Of a stretch of 64,000 nt of DNA, positions 3,201 to 20,330 are shown in pieces. The translations under genes were made by a program, and so were the position numbers. The notes beneath the pieces were generated by a model that was not told where the DNA came from, did not search any database, and saw nothing but the letters and a program-made list of their open reading frames with translations. The stretch lies in assembly GCA_964035545.1 (NCBI GenBank), contig OZ037771.1:8425408-8489407 (forward strand), in the 5' to 3' direction. Each line of letters starts with the position of its first letter. Within the stretch, counting starts at the first letter, position 1. Source of the stretch: Bugula neritina (taxonomy: Eukaryota; Animalia; Bryozoa).

Positions 3201-6200
3201 TTTTCTGGGAGTATAAAACAGATATGAAGTACATTATAGGCAATAAAAACCGGTGCTGATTAGCTTTGTTATGTAATAGCCAAAGTAAGAGCATCACAAA
3301 GTAATGGTGACCCAGACTATTATTTTCTTGGCACAAAATATACATGTATTTTATATGCATCTCCTTCTCTTCCCTGCTGTGTATGTCACGTGATACACAC
3401 ACATGTATGTCACATGGTACACATACATGTATGTCACATGGTACACACACATGTATGTCACATGATACACACACATGTATGTCACATGATACACACACAT
3501 GTATGTCACATGGTACACATGTATGTCACATGATACACCCACATGTATGTCACATGATACACACACATGTATGTCACATGATACACACATACATGTATGT
3601 CACATGGTACACATACATGTATGTCACATGGTACACACACATGTATGTCACATGGTACACACACATGTATGTCACATGATACACACACATGTATGTCACA
3701 TGATACACATACATGTATGTCACATGGTACACACACATGTATGTCACATGATGCACACACATGTATGTCACATGGTACACACACATGTATGTCACATGAT
3801 ACACACATGTATGTCACATGATACACATACATGTATGTCACATGGTACACACACATGTATGTCACATGATACACACACATGTATGTCACATGATACACAC
3901 ACATGTATGTCACATGATACACACACATGTATGTCACGTGATACACACACACATGTATGTCACATGGTACACACACCTGTATATCACATGATACACATAC
4001 ATGTATGTCACATGGTACACACACATGTATGTCACATGGTACACACACATGTATGTCACATGGTACACATGTATGTCACATGGTACACATGTATGTCACA
4101 TGATACACCCACATGTATGTCACATGATACACACACACATGTATGTCACATGATACACACACATGTATGTCACATGATACACACACATGTATGTCATATG
4201 GTACACACACCTGTAGATCACATGATACACATACATGTATGTCACATGATACACACACATGTATGTCACATGATACACAGCTGTGACTGTGCTGCAGGTT
4301 ACATCTGCAGTTAAAGCGTTGCTGAGTGGACCATCCAATTTATCACTTATAGTAGACGTAAATAAAGGTTTTCTGCACATTATCAAGGACTCTTCTCAAT
4401 CAGCTGAAGTTGGAAATAAATTTTCTTCTGAAAAAAGTAAGGAACAGCAAATCCTTTTTTTATTTTTGGTGTATCTGGTTTAATTAGCACACCTAATAGT
4501 GGTTCATATATAATAGCAGTTTATGTTTATGCCTGATATTAATTTCTTGGATGCATTCTTTGATCATATCAAACTGTTGACCATGTTACCAAAAGGGAGG
4601 AAAGTTTAGCTACTTGAGATACATGCGCACACACACCCACACGCACAAAACACACACACACACACACACACACACATCTGTAGTTAAATGCCCCGTATTT
4701 TGCTAGTTTTACAGATTATCAAATCCACTACTAACTCTTGTCTCTTGGAGCTGCTGATAGAAGGTCGCAAGAAAGATGCCTTCTGCTTTGAGAACATCAG
4801 GGAGAGAGAGCATTTCTGTCAGTTGGTGCAGCAGTTGAAGAAAGTTCACAACAAGGAGGTGGATGTTGATAGCATATCAATATTCTGTGGAACCTGGAAT
4901 ATGGGTGAGTTTGTCTGTCTGTCTGTCTGTCCACTGCCTGTGTCATGTGCGGGTGGTGAGTTTCTGCGTGAGTGATCCTCAGTTCTATCAAACTTATCTA
5001 TCTCTCCTTGTCTCCTGTTATATTGGTTATGGTTAAAAGTGAAAGGCAAAACTTACATATAACAACATCATCATTATGATAAGGCTCTATGGCGCAATAG
5101 TGCTGCAGTTAGTTGAGGCAATGTGTCTGTAGCAATGAGACTGAGTTATTTAATGTCGACCTATTTGGTGTCACACCATATTTGTTTTGGTCTTCCTCTA
5201 GCTTATTTCCCTTCCGTTCTCTTTTCTGATATTATTCTAATGTCCTCTTTGCTTTCTTTTATGTCTAACATCACCATACCACTCTATTCTCTTTCTCATT
5301 AGATCTTTTATTAGCATCACTCCAGCCTTCTGCTCTGGTATTCTTACCTTTGTTATAGCTTATTCACAGGCAGTACCTTGACATTCACATCTCACAAGAA
5401 GTCCTCTTGTTAGCCAGATGTCCTGTGATCAGCCGTGTCCGTTTCCATACAAAATAACAGGTTTTATTACCATTATGTTATAGCTTAGTAGGCATCTTTT
5501 TTTCACATAGTACCTCAGTCTTTTTCTATTTGTTCCACACTCAAAACATTTTCACTTCTATCTCTTTACCACAACCTCCATCTTGGTAGATTGAGAAGTT
5601 CTGATGGCTTTGCAGTTTTTTAATTTATTTAAACTTTCCCTCCTAATCTTCATGTAGTCAGTCACTTACTATATTATACTATATCCTATATACTTTTACT
5701 ATAATTATTATACTATAGTTACTACACAAACTGTAAATTCTATATACTTGTACTATATATGCTATGCATACTATACTATGCATATTATACTGTCCATGTC
5801 GTACATACTATACTTACCATACATACTCTAATACTGTACCTACCATACATTGAGGCGTTTTCTCTCCTTTTTTTGTAAAACAACAGGTTATTTATGACAT
5901 GCAATTTGCATTTTAATGCTAACTAGTTCTCCAGTTTGAACTAATGCATTATAAATTGTTTTAAGCAGCTACTTCAGTATGTACACCTATGTACAAGTGA
6001 GTAGTTTTATCGTCAAGTAGTTATCCACCCCCTTGTGTAGAGAATGCAACTACTTTCTTTCAGTTACTCCTGTCTACTACAATCTTAGTTTATACCTTTT
6101 TTGGTTCATTATTGCCCATGCGTTAAATACACATTATATTGTATTAACTATATTGTAATATTATTCTTATTATGTTATATTTTGTATAATTGCTGATACA

Positions 6201-9200
6201 GCAACATATCAACTCAACAGCTTTTAGTTATGAGATGCCTGCATGATTGGAATGTTATCAATTGTTTATTTTATGTTGTAAAAACTATTTTTATTTTTAT
6301 CGATTAACATGATTCTATTGTTTTTATTTTTATCGATTGATGATATCCATTTATTGGTTCTTGATTTTGTTATTAGTTTATAACTGTTATGTTTCAAATA
6401 GGTAAAAAAATAGCACTAAGATTTCTCTACAAATAGCACTTTAAAAGCAGCAAGGTGAATGATTTTTCACTTCATAAGTATTTTAATTTTTGATTTTGAA
6501 GGTAATGAATTGCCACCACAACTTGGCCTTCAACCCTGGCTGAAATCTCAGGGGTCAGGCAAGACAAGGGTAACATCGTTAGCCCCAGAGCCTCATGATC
6601 TCTACGCTATCGGTACACAGGAAGCTAAAGTTAGCGAGAGAGATTGGGTTAACAGAGTGAAGCGACTTTTACACAATCAGTTCAACGTCCTTTTCCACCT
6701 GGTTAGTGCCATTTTATGCGTATTTATTTTTTGCTTTTCTTTATAGAATTATTTCTGAAAAAAAACAATAGGTTTTAAGTTTTGTTAAAACTAAAGGTAA
6801 TCAAGCTTGGTGGGTTTTTTGAGCCTCTGACTCCAATTTCTTGGAACTTAAGCTAACAGCTGGTAAAAAATGCACAGCTGTAGTTCTTAGACTGTTTTTG
6901 TAAGGATTGTTAGCTGCCCTAACGTGATATTGTGTCTGTAAATAATCAGTTTGAGTGGAGCAGCACTCAAGTCAGTATATAATGCTGCTACATTGTAAAG
7001 TTACAAATAACTTGACCCAAACAATTATAATATTTGACAATTAAAAACCATAATCGCTTTAAAGTAAAAGACTATATCAAAGCATGGCTGGGTTGCATGT
7101 CATTGTACTCCCTTGTTAGTAGCTGCCCAATCATTAACTAGGTTCTTAGAGTTTAGGTCATGGCTTTTATAAGGAATGAGACTTTCTTACTTTTTAAGTT
7201 ATGAGAACTAATTAGTTTTATAAATGATTAGTCATATATATATATATATATATAACATCAACCTCCTGCTATTTTGATATTGTGATAAACAAAATGAAGA
7301 AGTAATAGCAAAAGGATGTAGAGTTGCTAATTTAACCTATTGAAAAACAATAGATTGAATTCCTGAGTTACTGTATTGAACAATACACTAGCTGTCAGGG
7401 CAGACAGTGTAGTGCAGGTGCTATTGGTAGGTGGACGTATGCACACTCTGGCAGATTCGACTGGTAGTGTTTGTTAAACCTGAACATAAAAACAGAGTGA
7501 GTGCCGTGCAGAATGCTGTTGTTCGTACCGGCATCGCTAATGCTCTGGGTAAGTCCTCCTTGATGTGTTTTCATGTGTCAGATTTAATACAAAGCAAATC
7601 CTCATTTTTACATAGTCAAGAATAATTAAATTGATGGAGTCAAGCAAAATTTCACTGTGCCGGTCCGGTACATTGAATTTGACCATACTAAGTTAAATGT
7701 CGCGCAAAATTGCCAGATTTTCAAGTATCTACATAATTGTGTATGTCGATGTACAGTGCTCCCTCCGTATCTCACCAAGCTGCAGGTCTCGAAACCCTAA
7801 CATTTCATGACGCAGTAGAATACCAGATTTAACTCACAGATCCATTAAATTCAGCCATTTGTCTCTATACACGCATATATAAGCTGCAACATGTGGTCCA
7901 AGCCCTTCTCGTGACCTATGCAATTTCTTGAGAGCTGGATCCGTGAGATATGGAGGGAGCACTGTATTTGCATGCCAATCAGTCCAACAAGTTATTAGTT
8001 GAAGCCACTTGTTGCTACATAAGTCACTCTGATTACCGTACACCCTACATGTGTATCTCCTATATGGTGTGCATCTGTACATAGGGTGACCAAGTATATG
8101 CACCACTTACTGTAAGTGGTGCATATACTTGGTCACCCTATGTACAGATGCACATCATATAGGAGATACACATGTAGGGTGTACAGTAATCAGAGTGACT
8201 TATGTAGCAAAAAGTGGTTCCAACTAATAACTTGTTGGACTAATTGGCATGCAAATACAGTGCTCCCTCCATATCTCACGGAGTGTATATACACAGTGGT
8301 GTATATACTTGGGCACGTGCATACACAAAGTGTCAATGTATATAACCTACTTGCTATACAGTAGATATGCATACATGAAGTGTGCCTTAGCCACATGAAC
8401 AATACACTCAATTTCCACGTACCATGTTACAGGGAACAAAGGTGCTGCCACTATATCACTCAGCTTTGATGGCACCTCTCTCTGCTTCATGTGCTGCCAT
8501 TTAGCTGCCAACAGAGAACGTGTGGCCAGGTGTGTGTCTACTTGAAGAGGGCGTCAGTCTGGTTTGATTTGTATTTCATGTGATAAATACCAATACCTGT
8601 ATTGCTATGCTTCGCTGGTGTATTTCTCATAACTGCATGCCAGTACATATATATCATTTTGACATTGACATAGCCCTGTTCTCTTGTGTAGGAGGAATCA
8701 GAACTCAAGGGACATAGTCAAGAACCTCTCCAACTCTATTGGTAACAAAAACTTTGCTGATTTTGATGTCTCCAACCAGTTCAACCATGTGTTTTTCTTT
8801 GGTGATCTGAACTATAGAGTTGATGGAGAAATCAAGGTAACACGGTAGAGCCTGTTGTATAATGACCAATCCCAACTGGTTCTGTATATTTTGTGGTTGT
8901 ATACTCTTTGTTGAAATGTTTTGGGGAGGTAATTCCATTCTTTGGTAAAACAGGAAGTGCTGGAGATGGCAAGCAAGGAGCAGTATACAGAAATGTTGAA
9001 GTTGGATCAGTTGATCAACACTATCAATGAAAGGACGGCTTTCTATGGATACAGTAAGTCTTTGAGTTTACGCTCCTGTGTAATGCCATAAGCATTTATA
9101 TTAGAAGTAAACCTACCTAACTGTAAACAGTGCGGCTTATGAGTTGTCTGTCCAATACGTGACAGATTTCTCTGAGTCATTCCATCTTACCTGCTGTACC

Positions 9201-12200: not shown

Positions 12201-15200
12201 ATCTCACTTACCTGGGCAGTCAGACCGGCATCATCAGGTTCAACCAATCATTTCAAGTATTCTTGTTATAAACAAAGTAGGGAGCAGCCGTGGTCTAGGG
12301 GTTAGAGCGCTTACCTAGTAAGCACGAAGGACAAAGGCCATTGGTGATGTTAGAAAGAGCATCCAGTCATAATTGCTACTGTGCATCATCTGAATAAGTC
12401 CTTAGCCCAATTTGACATTGCATAAAAATTGCTAGGTGTTACTGTAGATTACTATAGAATACACCTACTTGCTATAAAATGCACTTACTCTACTGTAGAA
12501 TACACCTACTATACTGCAGAATACACCTACTATACTGCAAAATACACCTACTATGCTGTATAGTAGGTGTATTAACATATCTTTTAATACACTTGCTATG
12601 TGTATTAAGAAGTATATTTTCTATATATTATCCAGAGGCTGTATGAAGGCTCTAATGGCGGACACTGTGGACAGCTCTGTACCTGTAAAACGTCTCAGCA
12701 ACAGTAAGTTATGTTTCTACACTTAGTAGCAACAGCCAAGAGGTGATGTGTTACAAATCACAATAATATTTTCAATACTTGTGAGTTGAAAATGCTGCAA
12801 TAAGTTGCAATATGTTACTAGATATATGCACTATATAGTATTATATTATGATGATTCAGCTATTGCACATGGCGTTCATATACTCTAGTATACTGTGGTG
12901 TACTGCTGTATGTTGTACATATAGTAGTGTCACTTGTAAATATATATACTGTAGATATACATACTGTAGATATATACAGTATAGATATATACTGTAGACA
13001 TATACACCGTAGACACACATACACTATAGATATATACTGTAGATATAGTGGTGGTAGACGACACATACGCTGCTCCCCTCTCAGCACTCTCCTGGGATAA
13101 TGAAGAGACTCGCTCCACTCTCAAAGTACCAGATTCTCAGCCTCGAGTCAGAGGTAGACCCATGTCCTTCGTGTCATCTTCTAGACCACAGAGGGGACTG
13201 CCACCCTTGCCCTCTCATTATGATGTACCTCATGAGGGTGGGGCTAAGGCTTTGTCCCCTGTCAGACCTCACAGCAGTGTGCATTCCAGCTCAGAGTACT
13301 ACAACGAGGTGAAGGGTGCAGAAGGAGGTTAGCTTATATGCCTTCTATATATACCAACAGTAGCATTGGTCTCATTGCATCTGCAGCTTTAATAACTGTA
13401 TTGTATACAGATACATTCAATTATATTCTATGTAGCTTACTATAACACTGGTGTACTCAAGCCATTTCCATCTAAACATGTCCCATTGTTGAGGGTTGGA
13501 GAGACAGCTAATAATGAATATGAAGAGTGTGAGGTGAATATATTTACTATACAATGTGTATACTCTACTCTACAATGTGTATACTCTACTCTACAATGTG
13601 TATACTCTACTCTACATACTCTACTCTACAATGTGTATACTCTACTCTACAATGTGTATACTCTACTCTACAACGTGTATACTCTACTCTACAATGCGTA
13701 TACTCTACTCTACAATGTGTATACTCTACTCTACAGTGTGTATACTCTACTCTACAATGTGTATACTCTGCTCTACAATGTGTATACTCTACTCTACAAT
13801 GTGTATACTCTACTCTACAATGTGTATACTCTACTCTACAATGTGTATACTCTACTCTACAACATGTATACTCTACTCTACAATGTGTATACTCTACTCT
13901 ACATACTCTGCTCTACAATGTGTATACTCTACTCTACAATGTGTATACTCTACTCTACAATGTGTATACTCTACTCTACAATGTGTATACTCTACTCTAC
14001 ATACTCTACTCTACAATGTGTATACTCTACTCTACAATGTGTATACTCTACTCTACAATGTGTATACTCTACTCTACATACTCTACTCTACATACTCTAC
14101 TCTACAATGTGTATACTCTACTCTACATACTCTACTCTACAATGTGTATACTCTACTCTACAATGTGTATACTCTACTCTACAATGTGTATACTCTACTC
14201 TACAATGTGTATACTCTACTCTACAATGTGTATACTCTACTCTAAAATGTGTATACTCTACTCTACAATGTGTATACTCTACTCTACATACTCTACTCTA
14301 CATACTCTACTCTACAATGTGTATACTCTACTCTACATACTCTACTCTACATACTCTACTTTACAATGTGTATACTCTACTCTACATACTCTACTCTACA
14401 TACTCTACTCTACAATGTGTATACTCTACTCTACAATGTGTATACTCTACTCTAAAATGTGTATACTCTACTCTAAAATGTGTATACTCTACTCTACAAT
14501 GTGTATACTCTACTCTACATACTCTACTCTACATACTCTACTCTACAATGTGTATACTCTACTCTACATACTCTACTCTACAATGTGTATACTCTATTCT
14601 ACAATGTGTATACTCTACTCTACAATGTGTATACTCTACTCTACATACTCTACTTTATGTTGTCTGATTTCTCTCGAGTTTCCTAGCGAGCTACTCTGTG
14701 AATCCTGTACTACTTTAGCAGGAGGAAGAACTTTACGAGTCTGCGGAACCTGTACAGCCTGAGGTTACAGCCCCTAAAGCTGCTGCTCGACCTGATGTGG
14801 AATCCAAAGCTAAGCTTGCTATGGAGGTTTCACCTTCACCTAAAGAAAGAATCATTCCACCAGCTGGCCAGGTTTGTACTAATTGGTTGTTGAGATAGAA
14901 TATAGCGGGCAATCTTGGTCTAGGGGTTTGACCGTTTGCCTAGTAAACATGAAATCATGGGTTCGAACCTCAGAAAAGCTCATTGGTGATGTTAAGAAGA
15001 GCATCCAGTCATAATTGCTCCTGTGCACATCTTAATAAGTCCTTAGCCGCTTTAAGAAGCCTCTTTTCATCAGGGTTTCACACAGGAATGGCGACTATAA
15101 ACTTGCGCAAGTGTGATAGAATATAGAAGTTGTATGTGTTAGTAACAAATAGGTGAGAGCAATGGAGGACACTCCTGTTAAGCTGTTAGAAAGAATTTGA

Positions 15201-17616
15201 GGTGGCAGCCAGTATTCCCATACAAATCACAGACATGCTGACCTGTAACTTATATTAAGAGAAGCTAAAACATTTAGCACTTGATAAACTTTATGGTTTA
15301 AGATGCGAAACCATGCATTGAGCACATTTATAACATATAACAGATATTCTACTGTGTTTGTCTATTTGCTTCATTCAATTTATTTCAGCGCAGCTCACTG
15401 CCTGATGTGGAAAGGTAAACTGTTTTCTGACTTTAGTTGACTTGTCTTCTAACTCAGAGTCTGTCAGCGTTAGATTGAGTCTCTACCTGGCTTGCTTGAG
15501 TTCCGGGAATTATTAGCCTTGATTGTAAAATGCTCCAATGCATTAGCATATCAACTCTCTACCACTAAAACACTATTCATGATAGATATCGTGAATAACA
15601 AAGTCTTGAATCATATCTACAGTTCAACAATCAATAGCTCAATAGTCAATATATAGGAAGTGTCTGCCTTTGCTATCAAATCTCATCTTCATTGATTTTT
15701 GATTTGGGTAGTGTTTCTGGAACTCAAGTGTGCTAGACTTCAGCTATACTTATCGAGATAGTGTCTGTAGTGTTAGTGACCCATCAATTTTATTTCGCTA
15801 GAAAATTAAATAGTTATAGATACCTATTCTTTTCTTTAAAAAATTCTTTATAATTTAAAAATACTACATGAGTTCTATTTTTCTACAAAACTTTAAATCC
15901 TAAACTGATATTTTTTGTAAAATTATGTTTACAATAATATCGAGCAAAGTTGGAATTCTCTGTGATCTACTCGTAGTTAATTTGCTTACACTTTTCACTT
16001 TTCATTACTTTCGGTCATTCAACTTGTGACACTGTGTCGGCAGCTTGTGACACTATGGCAACACGATTGACCTTGCATCAACTACGCCATCTCATTCACT
16101 CTCTCACAGTCTCGCATATTGTTTACTATTGTGCTGCATTACTTACACCAAATTCCCAGTGATACCATGCTTCATCTTAATAGTTTTGCAGTCCCTAGCA
16201 GCTGTTACAGTTAGATGCTCTTTACTTAACATGTTTATGTATGCTTTATGTAAATTTCATGTTTCTGCATACCAGTCTTTGTTGAAAGTCCTGTCATGTT
16301 TGCTGCTCTTTATTTTTATGACTCATGTTGTGCCACTTACTAGCACGTGGACTACTAAGTCACTTACTAGCACATGGACTACTAAGTCACTTACTAGCAC
16401 GTGGACTACTAAGTCACTTACTAGCACTGTGACTACTAAGTCACTTACTAGCACGTGGACTACTAAGTCACTTACTAGCACTGTGACTACTATGTCACTT
16501 AGTAGCACTGTGACTACTATGTCACTTAGTGTTATTAAGAGTTATTTTGCTACCTACTAAAAGTATCACAGCCATTCCACTGCAAGAAAGAATATTGTTT
16601 CATCACTATAGCTAACAGGTCTGGCTAATTTCTTTAGCTTTTCCAGTTTTAACCAAGACCCTAATATCTCATTAAATTTGCATTTTATTAACTAGCATCT
16701 TGATTTCCTGACAGCCTGTATTCAAGACTCCGTCCAAGAAAGCGTTTTACGTAAGCAGCAGTGTGTGGCAGGCAGCATGTTTGTATTCATGTGCTTGTTG
16801 CTAATCCCTCCTCCCATAATCCTTTGTTAGCCACCACTTGGATGGTTTAATAAGCCCTCCGTGTTATCATATGTCTGTCTGTATACCAGTGAACACTTGG
16901 TTTTGTGTGTAATATAGTTTAGTATCTTGTGTATGTATACTCTCTGTATATTAGCAATTAAGTAGTTGTAGCAGCGTTACAAGACTGAAAGTATGTATTT
17001 TGCTGGAAAATTGCGTCCCTTATGCTATCAATTGTTTATTTTTTAGAACTATTTTAAAATATTCAGCTTTCCCATCTCTTCCAAGACTTATTGCATAGCA
17101 ATTAGTGTTTTCGTACACATTTTCGTCAGACTCGTGAACTTGCTGTCGTATACAGAAATGGATGCTTAAAAGTTGGAAAAACCCCCGTGTTTTACATGGA
17201 CAACTTTACTCAATAATTTCTATTATGGTGATAGATTATTAAGGGATTTTCAAACCAAAATTCTAAATCATTACTAAGAACTTTGGCTAATGGGATTCTT
17301 TCAATACTGAGCCCCAATGTCTATCTACCAGGCTGGTGCCAACAGCCAGGCCTAGCGGTTTACTCTAAACCTCCTTGTCTGCTCAGCTCTACCTTATATT
17401 TGTATGCTTTAGTGCGTCAAGTCAGCACTTGAAAGGTCCAGTGCCGTTGCCACGTGGCTCCTAGCTCTTTCTATGCCGCAGTACGTCAGTATTTTCAATC
17501 GCAACAACTGGAAAACACTGAGGCAAGTCTCCAAGCTTTCGAGAGAAGAGTTGTTAGAAGGAGGAATAAAATCACAGCACCTGTTTAGACTTACAGATGC
17601 TATAGCCAAGCTCTGA
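222..17616 (+). CDS. INPPL1: SH2-containing inositol 5-phosphatase, SHIP2/INPPL1-like (5' end outside window, multi-exon)
   Basis: Inferred exons: 222-285, 497-647, 1332-1545, 2168-2323, 2794-2872, 2990-3169, 4298-4436, 4707-4904, 6502-6701, 7431-7548, 8433-8529, 8692-8836, 8954-9053, 9449-9540, 9845-9926, 10497-10639, 10891-10960, 11053-11132, 12050-12237, 12636-12703, 13043(or 13049)-13327, 13436-13533, 14719-14871, 15389-15414, 16715-16750, 17332-17357, 17413/17426-17616. SH2 C-half (VYQYRVL, LNELVEFY). 5-phosphatase motifs ISIFCGTWNMG, GNKGA, CHL, FFGDLNYRV, FPPTYR, PSWCDRVLWK, SDHKPV. C-terminal SAM (VATWLLALSMPQYVSIF...HLFRLTDAIAKL*) points to SHIP2 type. Junctions of the last small exons are uncertain. 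Confidence 0.93.
670..930. repeat. Intronic minisatellite, ~33-bp unit (tacatattacatagtatgcactatatcgtataa)
   Basis: Tandem copies visible; explains ORF 652-960. Confidence 0.9.
1529..1652 (+). repeat. Exact 62-bp tandem duplication spanning an exon end and 5' splice site
   Basis: caagctgataggtccag|gtaagtcacc...gttatagta occurs at 1529 and 1591. Confidence 0.95.
3379..4278. repeat. Intronic minisatellite, ~22-bp unit (acacacatgtatgtcacatg(a/g)t)
   Basis: About 40 tandem copies; source of the CMSHDTHT/VCHMIH ORFs. Confidence 0.95.
5060..5640 (-). mobile_element. Degenerate 3' fragment of an RTE-like non-LTR retrotransposon
   Basis: Minus-strand remnants IYQDGGCGKEIEVK, IKPVILYG, CEM and RGRPKQIWCD resemble RTE C-terminal motifs; interrupted by stops and frameshifts; short (ATG)n-like tail near 5065. 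Confidence 0.6.
7754..7964. mobile_element. Tc1/mariner(pogo)-type MITE
   Basis: 22-bp terminal inverted repeats cagtgctccctcc(g/a)tatctcac with 1 mismatch; TA flanks at 7752-7753 and 7965-7966; no coding capacity. Confidence 0.7.
7940..8282. repeat. Long near-perfect palindrome (171-bp arms, 1-nt spacer)
   Basis: 7940-8110 is the reverse complement of 8112-8282 with about 6 mismatches; explains the mirrored ORFs 7834-8106(-) and 8116-8364(+). Confidence 0.95.
9960..10230. repeat. Intronic minisatellite, ~15-17-bp unit (atatatcctatgta core)
   Basis: Tandem copies visible. Confidence 0.9.
11150..11660. repeat. Intronic minisatellite, 35-bp unit (acagtagtttctatctggtagtattatgacatcat)
   Basis: About 14 diverged tandem copies starting just after the donor at 11133. 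Confidence 0.9.
12281..12408 (+). mobile_element. tRNA-derived SINE, internally deleted copy
   Basis: A-box-like tggtctagggg and anticodon-loop-like cctAGTaa; body (cattggtgatgtta..gagcatccagtcataattgct..aataagtccttagcc) shared with 14906-15105; B box missing. Confidence 0.75.
13548..14657. repeat. Intronic minisatellite, 21-bp unit (tactctactctacaatgtgta) with 14-bp variants
   Basis: More than 50 units filling nearly the whole intron; explains the long YSTLQCV ORFs. Confidence 0.95.
14906..15105 (+). mobile_element. tRNA-Thr(AGT)-derived SINE
   Basis: A box tggtctagggg, cctAGTaa loop, B box ggttcgaacc, then a non-tRNA body shared with 12281-12408. Confidence 0.8.
16334..16530. repeat. Intronic minisatellite, 27-bp unit (cacttactagcacgtggactactaagt)
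   Basis: About 7 copies. Confidence 0.9.
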
Positions 17617-18882
17617 ATTTATATACCGACATCTATTTTTCTTTGCCTTATCTTGAACTCGTTTTGAGTTATCATAAGTTACCTTGTATAGCCATAGCTA
17701 TCTATTGGTGCACCTTCATTGAATCTGTTACCTTTGACTTTACTTAACCAACAAACATTGTTATCGAGAGAAACTTGTTCTATTTACACTGACGCACTTG
17801 GCAACTGTAGTACCTATTATGATTGACCAGCACTTTAGAAAATGATATAATATTACTTTTACTCTGCAAATGTGTACCTCTGTCTATGAAATTTTTACTA
17901 TGGTAATCAAAATATTGAATCAGCTATGGTATTATCAGCATGGTTAATTGCATAAAATTCCATGCCACAACTGTTATATTTTTTGTAATATTATTTATAT
18001 ATATTAATTAAGTGCAAGTATATTGATATTTAGTAGATGACTATGTTTTACAAAGCTTTATTATATTAGAAAAATTGAAGAAGTATCGTATTGAATCATT
18101 GTAGATAACCTGCAGTTATTGTATTTTACATTCCTTTATTAAATTATTATGCACATTATGCTCAGTTTTTGAAGATTGTACCATATTTTACTTTGATATT
18201 TGATTATAGTTTTTTTTAAATAAAAAGTTATCATTTTAATTAGTATTTCAACTGTTTATTTACTATTAGGATATTTTTTCAGAGCAAATTCCTAAATTGT
18301 GTCTTTCAGGTTGGGTGTTGGTAATTATTGCAAGCTGCATTAAGAAAGTATCAAATTGGGTAGCTATTTCTTCAAACTTTGACCACAACTTATAAAATTT
18401 TCTTTGTAGGTTTCACATCAGCTAAACATTTGTTGTCAAAGAGGTATTTATTAGTAATACCTTTTAAAAAGTAATTGCTCAATAATAGAAAGTTATTAAA
18501 TATAACATGCATAGAATCAATAGATTTTAGTTATAAGGATATTGTCCGCTACCTTGCTAGGGACACTAGTCTGGCGTCTTCCCACAAAAATGAGTTGAAA
18601 AAACATGCAGATTAACTGCAGAAAAATGATGTTAACTACATGCTTGCTAAAAATTATTGAAAAGAAATGTTTTTCATATGACACCATTGAAACATAATGA
18701 TTTTAATTTACTATCATTAGTATGTTAGCATTCTAACTGTTATGGCGATCTTTATACAACACAAGATCAATATTAAAGCATACTATTACTATATAAGAAT
18801 ACTATATGTGTGTGTGCGTGCGTGCATGCGTGTGTGTGTGTGTGTGTTGTAAAAGTGGTTAATAGACATCAACCACTAATCG

Positions 18883-18890
18883 TATCGATA
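18883..18890. promoter_or_regulatory. DRE-like palindrome TATCGATA
   Basis: Exact match to the DREF-binding element, about 150 bp upstream of the smORF at 19041 and next to a (TG)n tract. Confidence 0.4.
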
Positions 18891-19040
18891 GAGAAAAGTA
18901 ACTGTTTGAGACGAGCAAAAGTAAAGCAGTGGCAGATCTATGAAACATAAAAAATTGTTTTTTCATTTTCTGTTCGAATCGTGCAGTTCCACTTCTTTGC
19001 AAGATTTAGTTTATTTAATTACATGCAGAAACTTAGCACC

Positions 19041-19121
19041 ATGAAGAAAGTCGGTATTGTAGTCACAGCTGGGTTAACTGTCACTGCCTTAGGGTATGCA
19101 GTTTATAAGAAACTATTTTAA
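19041..19121 (+). CDS. Candidate 26-aa single-TM micropeptide or tail-anchor exon MKKVGIVVTAGLTVTALGYAVYKKLF
   Basis: Strong start context (gcaccATGa); in-frame upstream ATG at 19023; acceptor-like acatgcag ending 19028; paralog ending 19351 differs at many synonymous sites. Confidence 0.6.
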   Translation: MKKVGIVVTAGLTVTALGYAVYKKLF

Positions 19122-19216
19122 GCAACATTTTCACTCTTCTCAGCCAATAAGATCTTGGCCACTTGTAGACAGACTACTTCTGCTGGCATTCTCCACCGCA
19201 GGATATATTATTATAC

Positions 19217-19351
19217 ATGTTCTTTGTTATCTTATTTTTCAGTTTTTGTAATTACATAAATCTTTGTGTTTCTAAGAGCTTCAGCATAATAGCTATATCA
19301 GGACTGACCGCCACTGCCTTGGGGTATGCTGCTTATGAAAAGATCTTCTAA
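19217..19351 (+). CDS. Second paralogous hydrophobic smORF or exon ...SKSFSIIAISGLTATALGYAAYEKIF
   Basis: Open from ATG 19217 (weak context) to TAA 19349-19351; last 22 codons align without gaps to copy 1; possible phase-0 acceptor ttgtgtttctaag ending 19276. Confidence 0.5.
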   Translation: MFFVILFFSFCNYINLCVSKSFSIIAISGLTATALGYAAYEKIF

Positions 19352-20330
19352 CATGCAGGAGAACTCATCTGTTTGACTCAATCAGGTTTTAAAATGCAGC
19401 AGCTTGCGAAGTGTCTACAGCAGCTTCACTTCTGAATTATGGCTGCCTACAAAATATTTAGCTGTTAAAAATATCATTAAATAAATGTTTCTTTTTTAAA
19501 AAGCAAAGAAAACAAATATAACAAAAATCAATTTAAAAATTTCAAACTCGGTTTTAAGATTATGGTGTAATTACTTTTTGTGTATCCACTGTTTATATCA
19601 TATTTCAGTAAAATTGATATTTAATCTATAACTTACACAAAATATACAGTATGTAAATAAGCTCTAATAGTTGGAGAAAATATTGCAGTATTTATTTCCC
19701 AAGCACGAATACTTTGCAGTTTTAATAATATTGTATAGCATTATTGTCATGCCAGGTAAATATAACTAACTATTGGTTGTACTATTGTCTAGATAATATA
19801 ACATAAAAAGCATCTAACCTTGATTAGTTCTGCTTTGTGGTTGATTTCAGAAGCTGCAAAAACTTTACGAGATGTGAAATTGACAAATATTTATATCAAT
19901 TTCAGTTTCGAAAAGAGCGAAAACTTCCAGTACATGGCAAACATAATGGAAATGTTTATACTTACAAGCAACAACACTGTTTAAGCAGAAAGTTAACAAA
20001 TATTGAGTCAAATGATTCAAGAAATTATTAATGCCCATGCAAATGTTTCAGTTTATAACCTAACAATGGCTTCAATTATCCGATTGTGATGTCATTATTT
20101 TGTGTGAAGATTTTTTTAATTAATTTAATGTTGGTAAATTTGAGAAACAAATAACATAAATACCTATTATTATAAAGAATAGGTGACTGATTTATGTTCT
20201 GATTTTAGTTTATATAAATAGCTCATGCAACAACAAAAATTTAAAAATGTTAAATGGCTGTAAGGGCATCTACTTACCTGACCCCATAGCATATTGCTAG
20301 ATCTACCATGTAGAGACAGCAATAATTATA

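What the first reader, a model, noticed from the sequence alone, without database searches (positions are those of the whole stretch)
19023..19351. Tandem pair of paralogous membrane-anchor smORFs with a synonymous-substitution signature
Seen: two ungapped 22-codon segments 230 bp apart, GIVVTAGLTVTALGYAVYKKLF* and SIIAISGLTATALGYAAYEKIF*. Of the 13 identical residues, 8 use different synonymous codons (att/ata, ggg/gga, tta/ctg, act/acc, tta/ttg, gca/gct, aaa/aag, ttt/ttc). The TAA is aligned, the amino-acid changes are mostly conservative, and the flanks do not align. Both are too short for the ORF track. Copy 1 has an ACC-ATG context and a TATCGATA element about 150 bp upstream. Knowledge: a moderately hydrophobic helix followed by a few basic residues is the tail/signal-anchor pattern of mitochondrial outer membrane proteins such as Miro and SYNJ2BP/OMP25. 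Inference: an unannotated micropeptide locus encoding two peptides, either bicistronic or by alternative splicing (e.g. ATG AAG AAA|gtcggt joined to the acceptor ending 19276 gives MKKSFSIIAISG...).
Basis: partly seen in the sequence, partly recalled or inferred. Interest (0 to 1): 0.8.

Follow-up and report, generated by a model that had tools for sequence, protein, structure and literature searches.

The report
Orphaned tail-anchor exons in a bryozoan
The two short membrane-anchor frames are real but are most likely leftover copies of the last exon of a moss-animal-specific gene that is intact on another chromosome; the surprise is that parent gene, whose spliced messenger RNA is predicted to fold into an unusually stable 450-base structure.

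Summary
The pair is real (46/69 nt; dN/dS about 0.14). The genome is Bugula neritina. Both segments are copies of exon 5, the tail-anchor exon, of a five-exon, 187-189-aa gene family intact on chromosome 3 and under purifying selection. The window holds only a 5'-truncated relic: part of exon 3, exon 4 without its splice sites, exon 5, and a duplicate of exon 5. The TATCGATA lies inside dead exon 4. Other copies of this module are frameshifted, fused or drifting. Copy 2 has no ATG, lost its acceptor and evolves neutrally. Copy 1 keeps frame, acceptor and stop, with a weak synonymous excess on its own branch (about 5:2, P about 0.03), so a stand-alone 26-aa peptide stays possible (20%). No RNA evidence could be obtained. 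Unexpected: the spliced parent RNA (exons 3-5 plus 85 nt of UTR) folds at z -13 to -22 (29 controls: +2.6 to -5.9). One helix spans a splice junction, three pairs show compensatory change, and the window copy has lost the fold. The scan's notes held no earlier finding of this.

The parts
17413..17616 (+). Neighbour, not part of the relic: last coding exon (SAM domain, stop TGA) of a SHIP/INPPL1-like inositol 5-phosphatase gene
   Evidence: Pfam SAM; best PDB sequence match SHIP2 SAM E 4.5e-6; upstream exon 10499-10639 matches SHIP2 phosphatase E 9e-4
18559..18593 (+). 3' stump of parent exon 3: only the right arm of the exon-3 hairpin; splice donor removed by a deletion shared with the zinc-finger-cluster copies. 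5' limit of homology to the family.
   Evidence: no exon 1-3 homology in 17620-18545 above shuffles; no chromosome-7 hit for exons 1 or 3
18853..18944 (+). Remnant of parent exon 4: frame still open, but acceptor AG changed to AA (18851-18852) and donor GT changed to AC (18945-18946)
18883..18890 (.). TATCGATA, inside the exon-4 remnant (Val-Ser-Ile codons); absent from all paralogous exon-4 copies
   Evidence: 0.87 expected per 64 kb; 2135 genome-wide against 1230-1820 from Markov models
18945..19028 (+). Remnant of intron 4, ending in an intact CAG acceptor (19026-19028, phase 0)
19029..19121 (+). Copy 1: parent exon 5 (tail anchor), frame, acceptor and stop intact; in-frame ATGs at 19023 and 19041 (26-aa ORF from 19041)
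   Evidence: best 19-residue hydropathy 1.72, tail KKLF
19122..19200 (+). Remnant of the parent 3' UTR; in intact genes it carries the arms that pair with exons 3, 4 and 5; pairing eroded here
19238..19351 (+). Copy 2: old tandem duplicate of the intron-4 end plus exon 5; ancestral acceptor CAG changed to CAT (19255-19257), one base inserted, no ATG; a possible AG at 19275-19276
19476..19485 (+). Overlapping ATTAAA/AATAAA, possible poly(A) signal of the module
   Evidence: sequence only

Best explanation
The locus is a 5'-truncated, decaying paralog of a Bugula-specific five-exon gene. The parent (chromosome 3) encodes a 187-189-aa protein whose last exon gives a C-terminal tail anchor. In one subfamily exon 5 with its acceptor was duplicated in tandem long ago, and the two copies diverged while still coding, which wrote the synonymous signature. 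That module (exon-3 end, exon 4, exon 5, duplicate exon 5) was then spread by segmental duplication; in this window it lies between SHIP and a cysteinyl-tRNA synthetase gene, without exons 1-2, most of exon 3, the TATA promoter or the splice sites of exon 4. It therefore makes no parent protein, copy 2 is dead, and copy 1 is most likely the last part to have lost function. Shown: homology, exon structure, lost sites, substitution counts, predicted fold and its erosion. Inferred: order of events, absence of expression, membrane targeting. For the parent I infer post-translational insertion into the mitochondrial outer membrane or peroxisome, with the folded mRNA acting in cis on translation, stability or localisation.
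For: Intact GT-AG five-exon models without internal stops: L021, 187 aa; L020; L018, 189 aa, same intron phases, 104/185 residues identical; TATA at -95/-104 and AATAAA about 120 nt after the stop in both. Purifying selection on the parent: against a contig from another Bugula sample (L042) dN/dS 0.28, P 0.004, introns 10% diverged against 3.7% at replacement sites; L021 v L018 exons 1-3 0.39, P 7e-5. Met is not conserved in intact genes while the acceptor is, and the stop varies among TAA, TAG and TGA at one position. Five genomic copies carry a near-exact exon 4/exon 5 junction, and one 13-bp helix exists only after exon 3/exon 4 splicing: both support the splice model. The same tandem pair occurs on chromosome 5 with copy 1 frameshifted and copy 2 deleted, or collapsed into chimeras. 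The eight ATG-bearing sister copies show 1 synonymous and 11 replacement changes, including Ile to Arg and Gly to Glu in or next to the helix. Copy 1 is no more conserved than the non-coding spacer against paralogs (76-81% v 80-84%). Copy 2 branch neutral. An open 26-codon frame survives neutral drift of this depth in 17-47% of simulations.
Against: Copy 1's own branch shows about 5 synonymous to 2 replacement changes (P 0.004-0.15 depending on outgroup, typically 0.03, uncorrected). It is the only member of its subfamily that keeps acceptor, frame and stop together. A TATCGATA specific to this copy lies 158 bp upstream of the ATG. No transcript data were available. Caveat on the first point: dead exon-4 copies on chromosome 5 show equally low P values on their branches, so such a signal can be historical.
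Confidence: 0.62

Rival explanations
1. Copy 1 alone has been re-born as a stand-alone 26-aa (or 32-aa) membrane micropeptide: after truncation the lineage gained an ATG, and a TATCGATA element arose inside dead exon 4 to serve as promoter. Copy 2 is only 3' UTR.
For: Synonymous excess confined to the copy-1 branch, after the split from sisters that share the exon-3 donor deletion; A at -3 of the ATG; conservative replacements only; TATCGATA occurs once per 100 kb and is unique to this copy; poly(A)-like signal at 19476-19485.
Against: About seven changes carry the whole signal; the ATG is inherited and is also kept by neutrally drifting sisters; TATCGATA was picked after the fact and is only 1.2-1.7 times above Markov expectation genome-wide; no evidence here that it is a promoter element in bryozoans; no expression data.
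Confidence: 0.2
2. Copy 1 (or copy 2) has been captured as an alternative last exon of the upstream SHIP-like gene, giving a tail-anchored phosphatase isoform in place of the SAM domain.
For: Same strand, 1.4 kb after the SHIP stop; the copy-1 acceptor is intact and phase 0, and the SHIP exon ending at 14871 has a phase-0 donor by direct reading; it would explain selection on copy 1 without a new promoter.
Against: Phase agreement is expected one time in three; AATAAA signals at 18138 and 18219 would end the SHIP transcript first; no reads.
Confidence: 0.08
3. One reading: one locus making two paralogous peptides, bicistronic or by splicing from 19049 to 19277.
For: Both frames are open to an aligned TAA; a pyrimidine-rich AG exists at 19275-19276.
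Against: Copy 2 has no ATG and is neutral since its split from the nearest paralog (2 synonymous, 7 replacement); that AG is the old Lys codon and is also present in the deleted chromosome-5 copy; donor GTCGGT is far from consensus and not conserved in paralogs.
Confidence: 0.04
4. The family is a transposable element or a structured non-coding RNA and the frames are incidental.
For: Many dispersed, rearranged copies; strong inverted repeats; a weak language-model neighbour carrying an integrase zinc-binding family in 20% of members.
Against: Five in-phase GT-AG exons conserved between two divergent subfamilies; dN/dS below 1 also in unstructured exons 1-2; no Pfam match for exons 1-4; no credible Rfam match.
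Confidence: 0.04

Closest known systems
Mitochondrial outer membrane tail-anchored proteins (MAVS, OMP25/SYNJ2BP; mitoNEET anchor by sequence likeness)
   Same: Moderately hydrophobic helix (mean hydropathy 1.6-1.7) with basic residues around it and a 4-residue tail; this is the pattern described for MAVS and OMP25 (PMC9264363). Pfam MitoNEET_N matches the helix weakly (E 0.09-0.19, below cut-off).
   Different: No homology to any of these families; in mitoNEET the anchor is N-terminal; the parent's soluble part matches nothing outside Bugula; localisation untested.
Unprocessed (duplicated) pseudogene fragments
   Same: Retained introns, 5' truncation, lost splice sites, neutral drift in sister copies, historical dN/dS below 1.
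   Different: Copy 1 retains acceptor, frame and stop with a weak branch-specific synonymous excess.
Drosophila hairpin RNAs (hp-pncr009 family with 825-Oak targets; hp-tHMG cluster; PMC10317233)
   Same: Spliced fold-back transcripts in young, rapidly rearranging multi-copy families with full, truncated and fused paralogs side by side.
   Different: The Bugula parent still encodes a selected protein; its fold is branched with perfect helices of at most 15 bp, not a long continuous duplex; the arms pair different exons and UTR rather than an inverted gene copy; no small-RNA data.
C2 domain of synaptotagmin XIII (PDB 1wfm)
   Same: 30-position match to the exon-3 profile, E 0.14.
   Different: Not significant; not reproduced with a single sequence or exon 4; no Pfam C2 hit; the low-confidence model of exon 3 is helical (pLDDT 57). 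A lead only.

Membership tests
Stand-alone micropeptide gene (smORF) | Own start codon conserved among functional homologs | tested here: not met
   Position is Leu, Ala or Ile in intact genes; ATG only in copy 1, drifting sisters and broken copies; copy 2 has TCT
Stand-alone micropeptide gene (smORF) | Ongoing purifying selection on the ORF | tested here: inconclusive
   Copy 1 branch about 5:2, P about 0.03; copy 2 branch neutral; dead exon-4 copies give similar P values
Stand-alone micropeptide gene (smORF) | Transcribed and translated | not testable with these tools
Stand-alone micropeptide gene (smORF) | Conserved at the orthologous locus in relatives | tested here: inconclusive
Duplicated pseudogene fragment | Homology to an intact multi-exon parent with introns retained | tested here: met
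Duplicated pseudogene fragment | Disabling lesions (lost exons, promoter, splice sites) | tested here: met
   Exons 1-2 and most of 3 absent; exon-3 donor, both exon-4 sites and copy-2 acceptor lost
Duplicated pseudogene fragment | No functional product from any part | not testable with these tools
   needs RNA and ribosome data
Tail-anchored membrane protein (parent gene) | Single hydrophobic helix at the C-terminus with a very short tail | tested here: met
Tail-anchored membrane protein (parent gene) | Insertion into mitochondrial outer membrane or peroxisome | not testable with these tools
   inferred from the basic, moderately hydrophobic tail only
Hairpin RNA / endo-siRNA locus (parent gene) | Long near-continuous duplex (well over 21 bp) | tested here: not met
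   longest perfect helix 15 bp; exon-3 hairpin about 30 bp with internal loops
Hairpin RNA / endo-siRNA locus (parent gene) | Dicer-dependent small RNAs | not testable with these tools
   no small-RNA data
Known Rfam RNA family | Covariance-model match at gathering score | tested here: not met
   on unspliced DNA only; a family split by introns could be missed
C2 domain or Bcl-2 family (parent protein) | Profile match above cut-off | tested here: inconclusive
   exon-by-exon scans blank or E 0.14; the joined protein was not searched

The most novel reading that the evidence does not exclude
The parent family is a dual-code gene: a lineage-restricted tail-anchored protein whose mature mRNA carries a selected, splice-dependent, about 450-nt branched RNA structure that pairs coding exons 3-5 with the 3' UTR and puts the stop codon in a hairpin loop, acting as a regulatory switch or small-RNA precursor of a kind not described. 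The window copy would then be a truncated offshoot that shed the fold; its copy 1 may have become a free micropeptide (that extra step about 20%).
Probability: 0.4. Interest if true: 0.75.

Novelty: new variant of a known kind. Interest (0 to 1): 0.45.

Why it matters
As flagged, the locus is mostly a cautionary case: a synonymous-substitution signature between two short frames can be a fossil of a terminal exon, not proof of micropeptides. The interest lies one step away. A spliced animal mRNA with two-thirds of 450 bases paired, frozen synonymous sites in paired regions and a helix that needs splicing is rare, and it sits in a young, unstable gene family with no detected relatives outside Bugula. 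If functional, it gives a compact, testable case of protein and RNA structure written in the same bases, and the window copy offers a natural control that lost the fold.

Tried and rejected
iqtree2 does not offer ancestral sequences here; I used pairwise and three-point counts instead and built none. Word search with the exon-3 frame was blank, but its length ceiling (185 aa) is just under the parent's length. The full HMMER search with the exon-3 profile found only three Bugula-like gene calls and three repeat translations. Atlas searches gave unnamed clusters only. Rejected: mitoNEET membership (stop follows the helix), Bcl-2 (motif spacing recalled from memory, no profile match), selenoprotein or read-through (stop varies; post-stop frame dN/dS 0.52, P 0.12, and its conservation is explained by base pairing), sigma-70 scan (irrelevant to an animal). 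The first folding script timed out; the L016 exon-2 boundary was not verified.

Full report
Setting. The genome has 216,009,554 bases in 321 pieces, with C3 at 32.42 Mb and C5 at 17.72 Mb. This matches the Bugula neritina assembly tzBugNeri2.1 (216.00 Mb, 320 scaffolds plus mitochondrion, same chromosome lengths; PMC11480708). The finding lies between the 3' end of a SHIP-like gene on + (stop at 17616) and a cysteinyl-tRNA synthetase gene on -.

The observation. The two segments are as described: 46 of 69 bases identical, 13 identical residues, 8 with different codons, aligned TAA; dN/dS 0.14 over 26 codons. One detail is wrong. The 5' flanks align over about 45 bases, so the duplicated unit is the end of an intron plus the exon.

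What they are. The copy-1 peptide has 24 matches in the genome, clustered on C3, at C5:10.3 Mb and at C5:14.6 Mb. On C3 the segment follows a TTACAG acceptor and is the fifth exon of a gene: L021 exons 6763-6910, 7137-7187, 7340-7519, 7726-7817, 7935-8027, all GT-AG, 187 aa, no internal stop. L020 is a near twin; L018 is a divergent paralog of 189 aa with the same intron phases; L022 has a stop in exon 4. Both subfamilies have CCAAT and TATA boxes about 100 bases before the ATG and AATAAA about 120 bases after the stop. The parent is under purifying selection: against L042, a genomic contig from another Bugula sample, dN/dS is 0.28 (P 0.004) with introns 10% apart; exons 1-3 of L021 v L018 give 0.39 (P 7e-5). 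The residue where copy 1 has Met is Leu, Ala or Ile in intact or acceptor-bearing copies, and the stop alternates TGA, TAA, TAG at one position. Five chromosome-5 copies carry exon 4 joined to exon 5 within a base or two of the predicted junction.

What the window holds. Homology starts at 18559. It runs through a stump of exon 3 whose donor was deleted, intron 3, exon 4 (18853-18944; frame open, acceptor AG to AA, donor GT to AC), intron 4, exon 5 (copy 1), the old UTR, and the duplicate (copy 2). Exons 1-2, most of exon 3 and the promoter are absent. The TATCGATA is three codons of exon 4. The same tandem pair recurs at C5:10,306,760-10,307,350 with copy 1 frameshifted and copy 2 partly deleted, as five collapsed chimeras nearby, and eight times beside C2H2 zinc-finger genes at C5:14.6 Mb with acceptor and stop lost.

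Is selection still acting? Among the eight ATG-bearing sisters there are 1 synonymous and 11 replacement changes. Copy 2 differs from its nearest paralog by 2 and 7, and three-point counts put the synonymous excess on the deep branch, not on copy 2's own. Against paralogs, copy 1 is no more conserved than the spacer. The exception is copy 1's own branch: about 5 synonymous to 2 replacement changes, P near 0.03 uncorrected. Dead exon-4 copies give similar values on their branches, and an open frame survives this much neutral drift 17-47% of the time. I read this as recent loss of function, with a 20% chance that copy 1 is still translated from its ATG and 8% that it is spliced onto SHIP. No RNA data could be obtained.

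The parent protein. Exon 5 gives a 19-residue helix of mean hydropathy 1.64 with lysines on both sides and a four-residue tail, the pattern reported for outer-membrane tail anchors such as MAVS and OMP25 (PMC9264363). Exons 1-4 match no Pfam family. A full HMMER search with an exon-3 profile found only Bugula-like gene calls and repeat artefacts. A synaptotagmin XIII C2 match at E 0.14 is an unconfirmed lead. The joined protein was not searched.

The unexpected part. The intact genes carry nested inverted repeats linking exon 3, exon 4, exon 5 and the first 85 bases after the stop. The spliced 448-base stretch folds at about -236 kcal/mol with two-thirds of bases paired: z -19.6 (L021) and -12.8 (L018) against dinucleotide shuffles, about -10.6 against synonymous-codon shuffles, and -16 and -22 for L016 and L042, while 29 coding and GC-rich controls range from +2.6 to -5.9. 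Exons 1-2 are unstructured (z -0.3). Ten core helices are shared: a 15-bp stem closing exon 3 with the UTR, two exon-3 hairpins, a 13-bp helix that crosses the exon 3/4 junction and so needs splicing, two exon 4-UTR helices, an exon 4-exon 5 stem that uses the helix-coding bases, and a hairpin with the stop codon in its loop. Intact copies keep 121-124 of 124 pairs; paired sites diverge two to three times more slowly than unpaired ones (0.03 v 0.10 in L042; 0.09 v 0.22 in L018); three pairs changed on both sides between the subfamilies. Covariation is thin because the copies are few and related, and all of this is prediction. No Rfam family fits the unspliced DNA. In the window the fold is gone (z -0.2, +0.8, +2.1) and 23 of the 80 pairs still present are broken, a second sign of decay. 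The pairing also explains why the spacer between the two copies is conserved.

Mechanism, shown and inferred. Shown: exon identity, lesions, counts, predicted fold. Inferred: tandem duplication of exon 5 in a then-functional gene, spread by segmental duplication, truncation, decay. For the parent I think cis control of translation, stability or localisation is most likely, since the closing stem ends about 35 bases before the poly(A) signal and the helices are too short for a classic hairpin RNA; the Drosophila hairpin-RNA clusters (PMC10317233) are the nearest analogy in family behaviour, not in structure.

Verdict. Observation real; two-peptide reading not supported; most likely a pseudogene fragment (0.62). 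The flagged locus alone would score about 0.25. The structured parent mRNA raises the overall interest to 0.45.

Noticed in passing
L021:7342-8112, L018:7735-8542, L016, L020, L042 (G000:C3 about 4.93, 5.01, 6.31, 6.35 Mb): Intact parent genes whose spliced RNA folds at z -13 to -22 with a junction-spanning helix and three compensatory changes; deserves its own follow-up.
   Followed up: partly
L024:6688, L025:6379, L027, L028 (G000:C5 10.30-10.37 Mb): Five copies with an intron-less exon 4/exon 5 junction that then jump back into exon 4; may reflect reverse transcription with template switching on the structured RNA.
   Followed up: partly
L031, L033-L036, L038, L039 (G000:C5 14.56-14.71 Mb): Eight relic modules alternate with C2H2 zinc-finger genes; they keep both arms of the exon-3 hairpin while the loop between them is replaced.
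   Followed up: partly
window:15390-15415, 16716-16752, 17413-17616: By direct reading, two small candidate SHIP exons would shift the last exon into a frame that stops before the SAM domain, while skipping them keeps SAM; possible SAM-less isoform.
   Followed up: no
L038:1039-2364 and 4568-5869: Two tandem intron-less P2X receptor ORFs (Pfam PF00864, E 1e-39 for the first) next to the zinc-finger cluster.
   Followed up: no
G000:C5:11907562-11907636, C5:11986085-11986165, C5:10624034-10624153: Weak exon-3 and exon-1 hits that may be more distant family members; could not be fetched.
   Followed up: no
L016:4731-4811 and L018:7360-7402: A broken extra exon-5-like copy lies inside intron 1 of the L016/L018 subfamily.
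   Followed up: no
L029:2701-3148: GC-rich control window with folding z -5.9, the most structured control; not examined.
   Followed up: no
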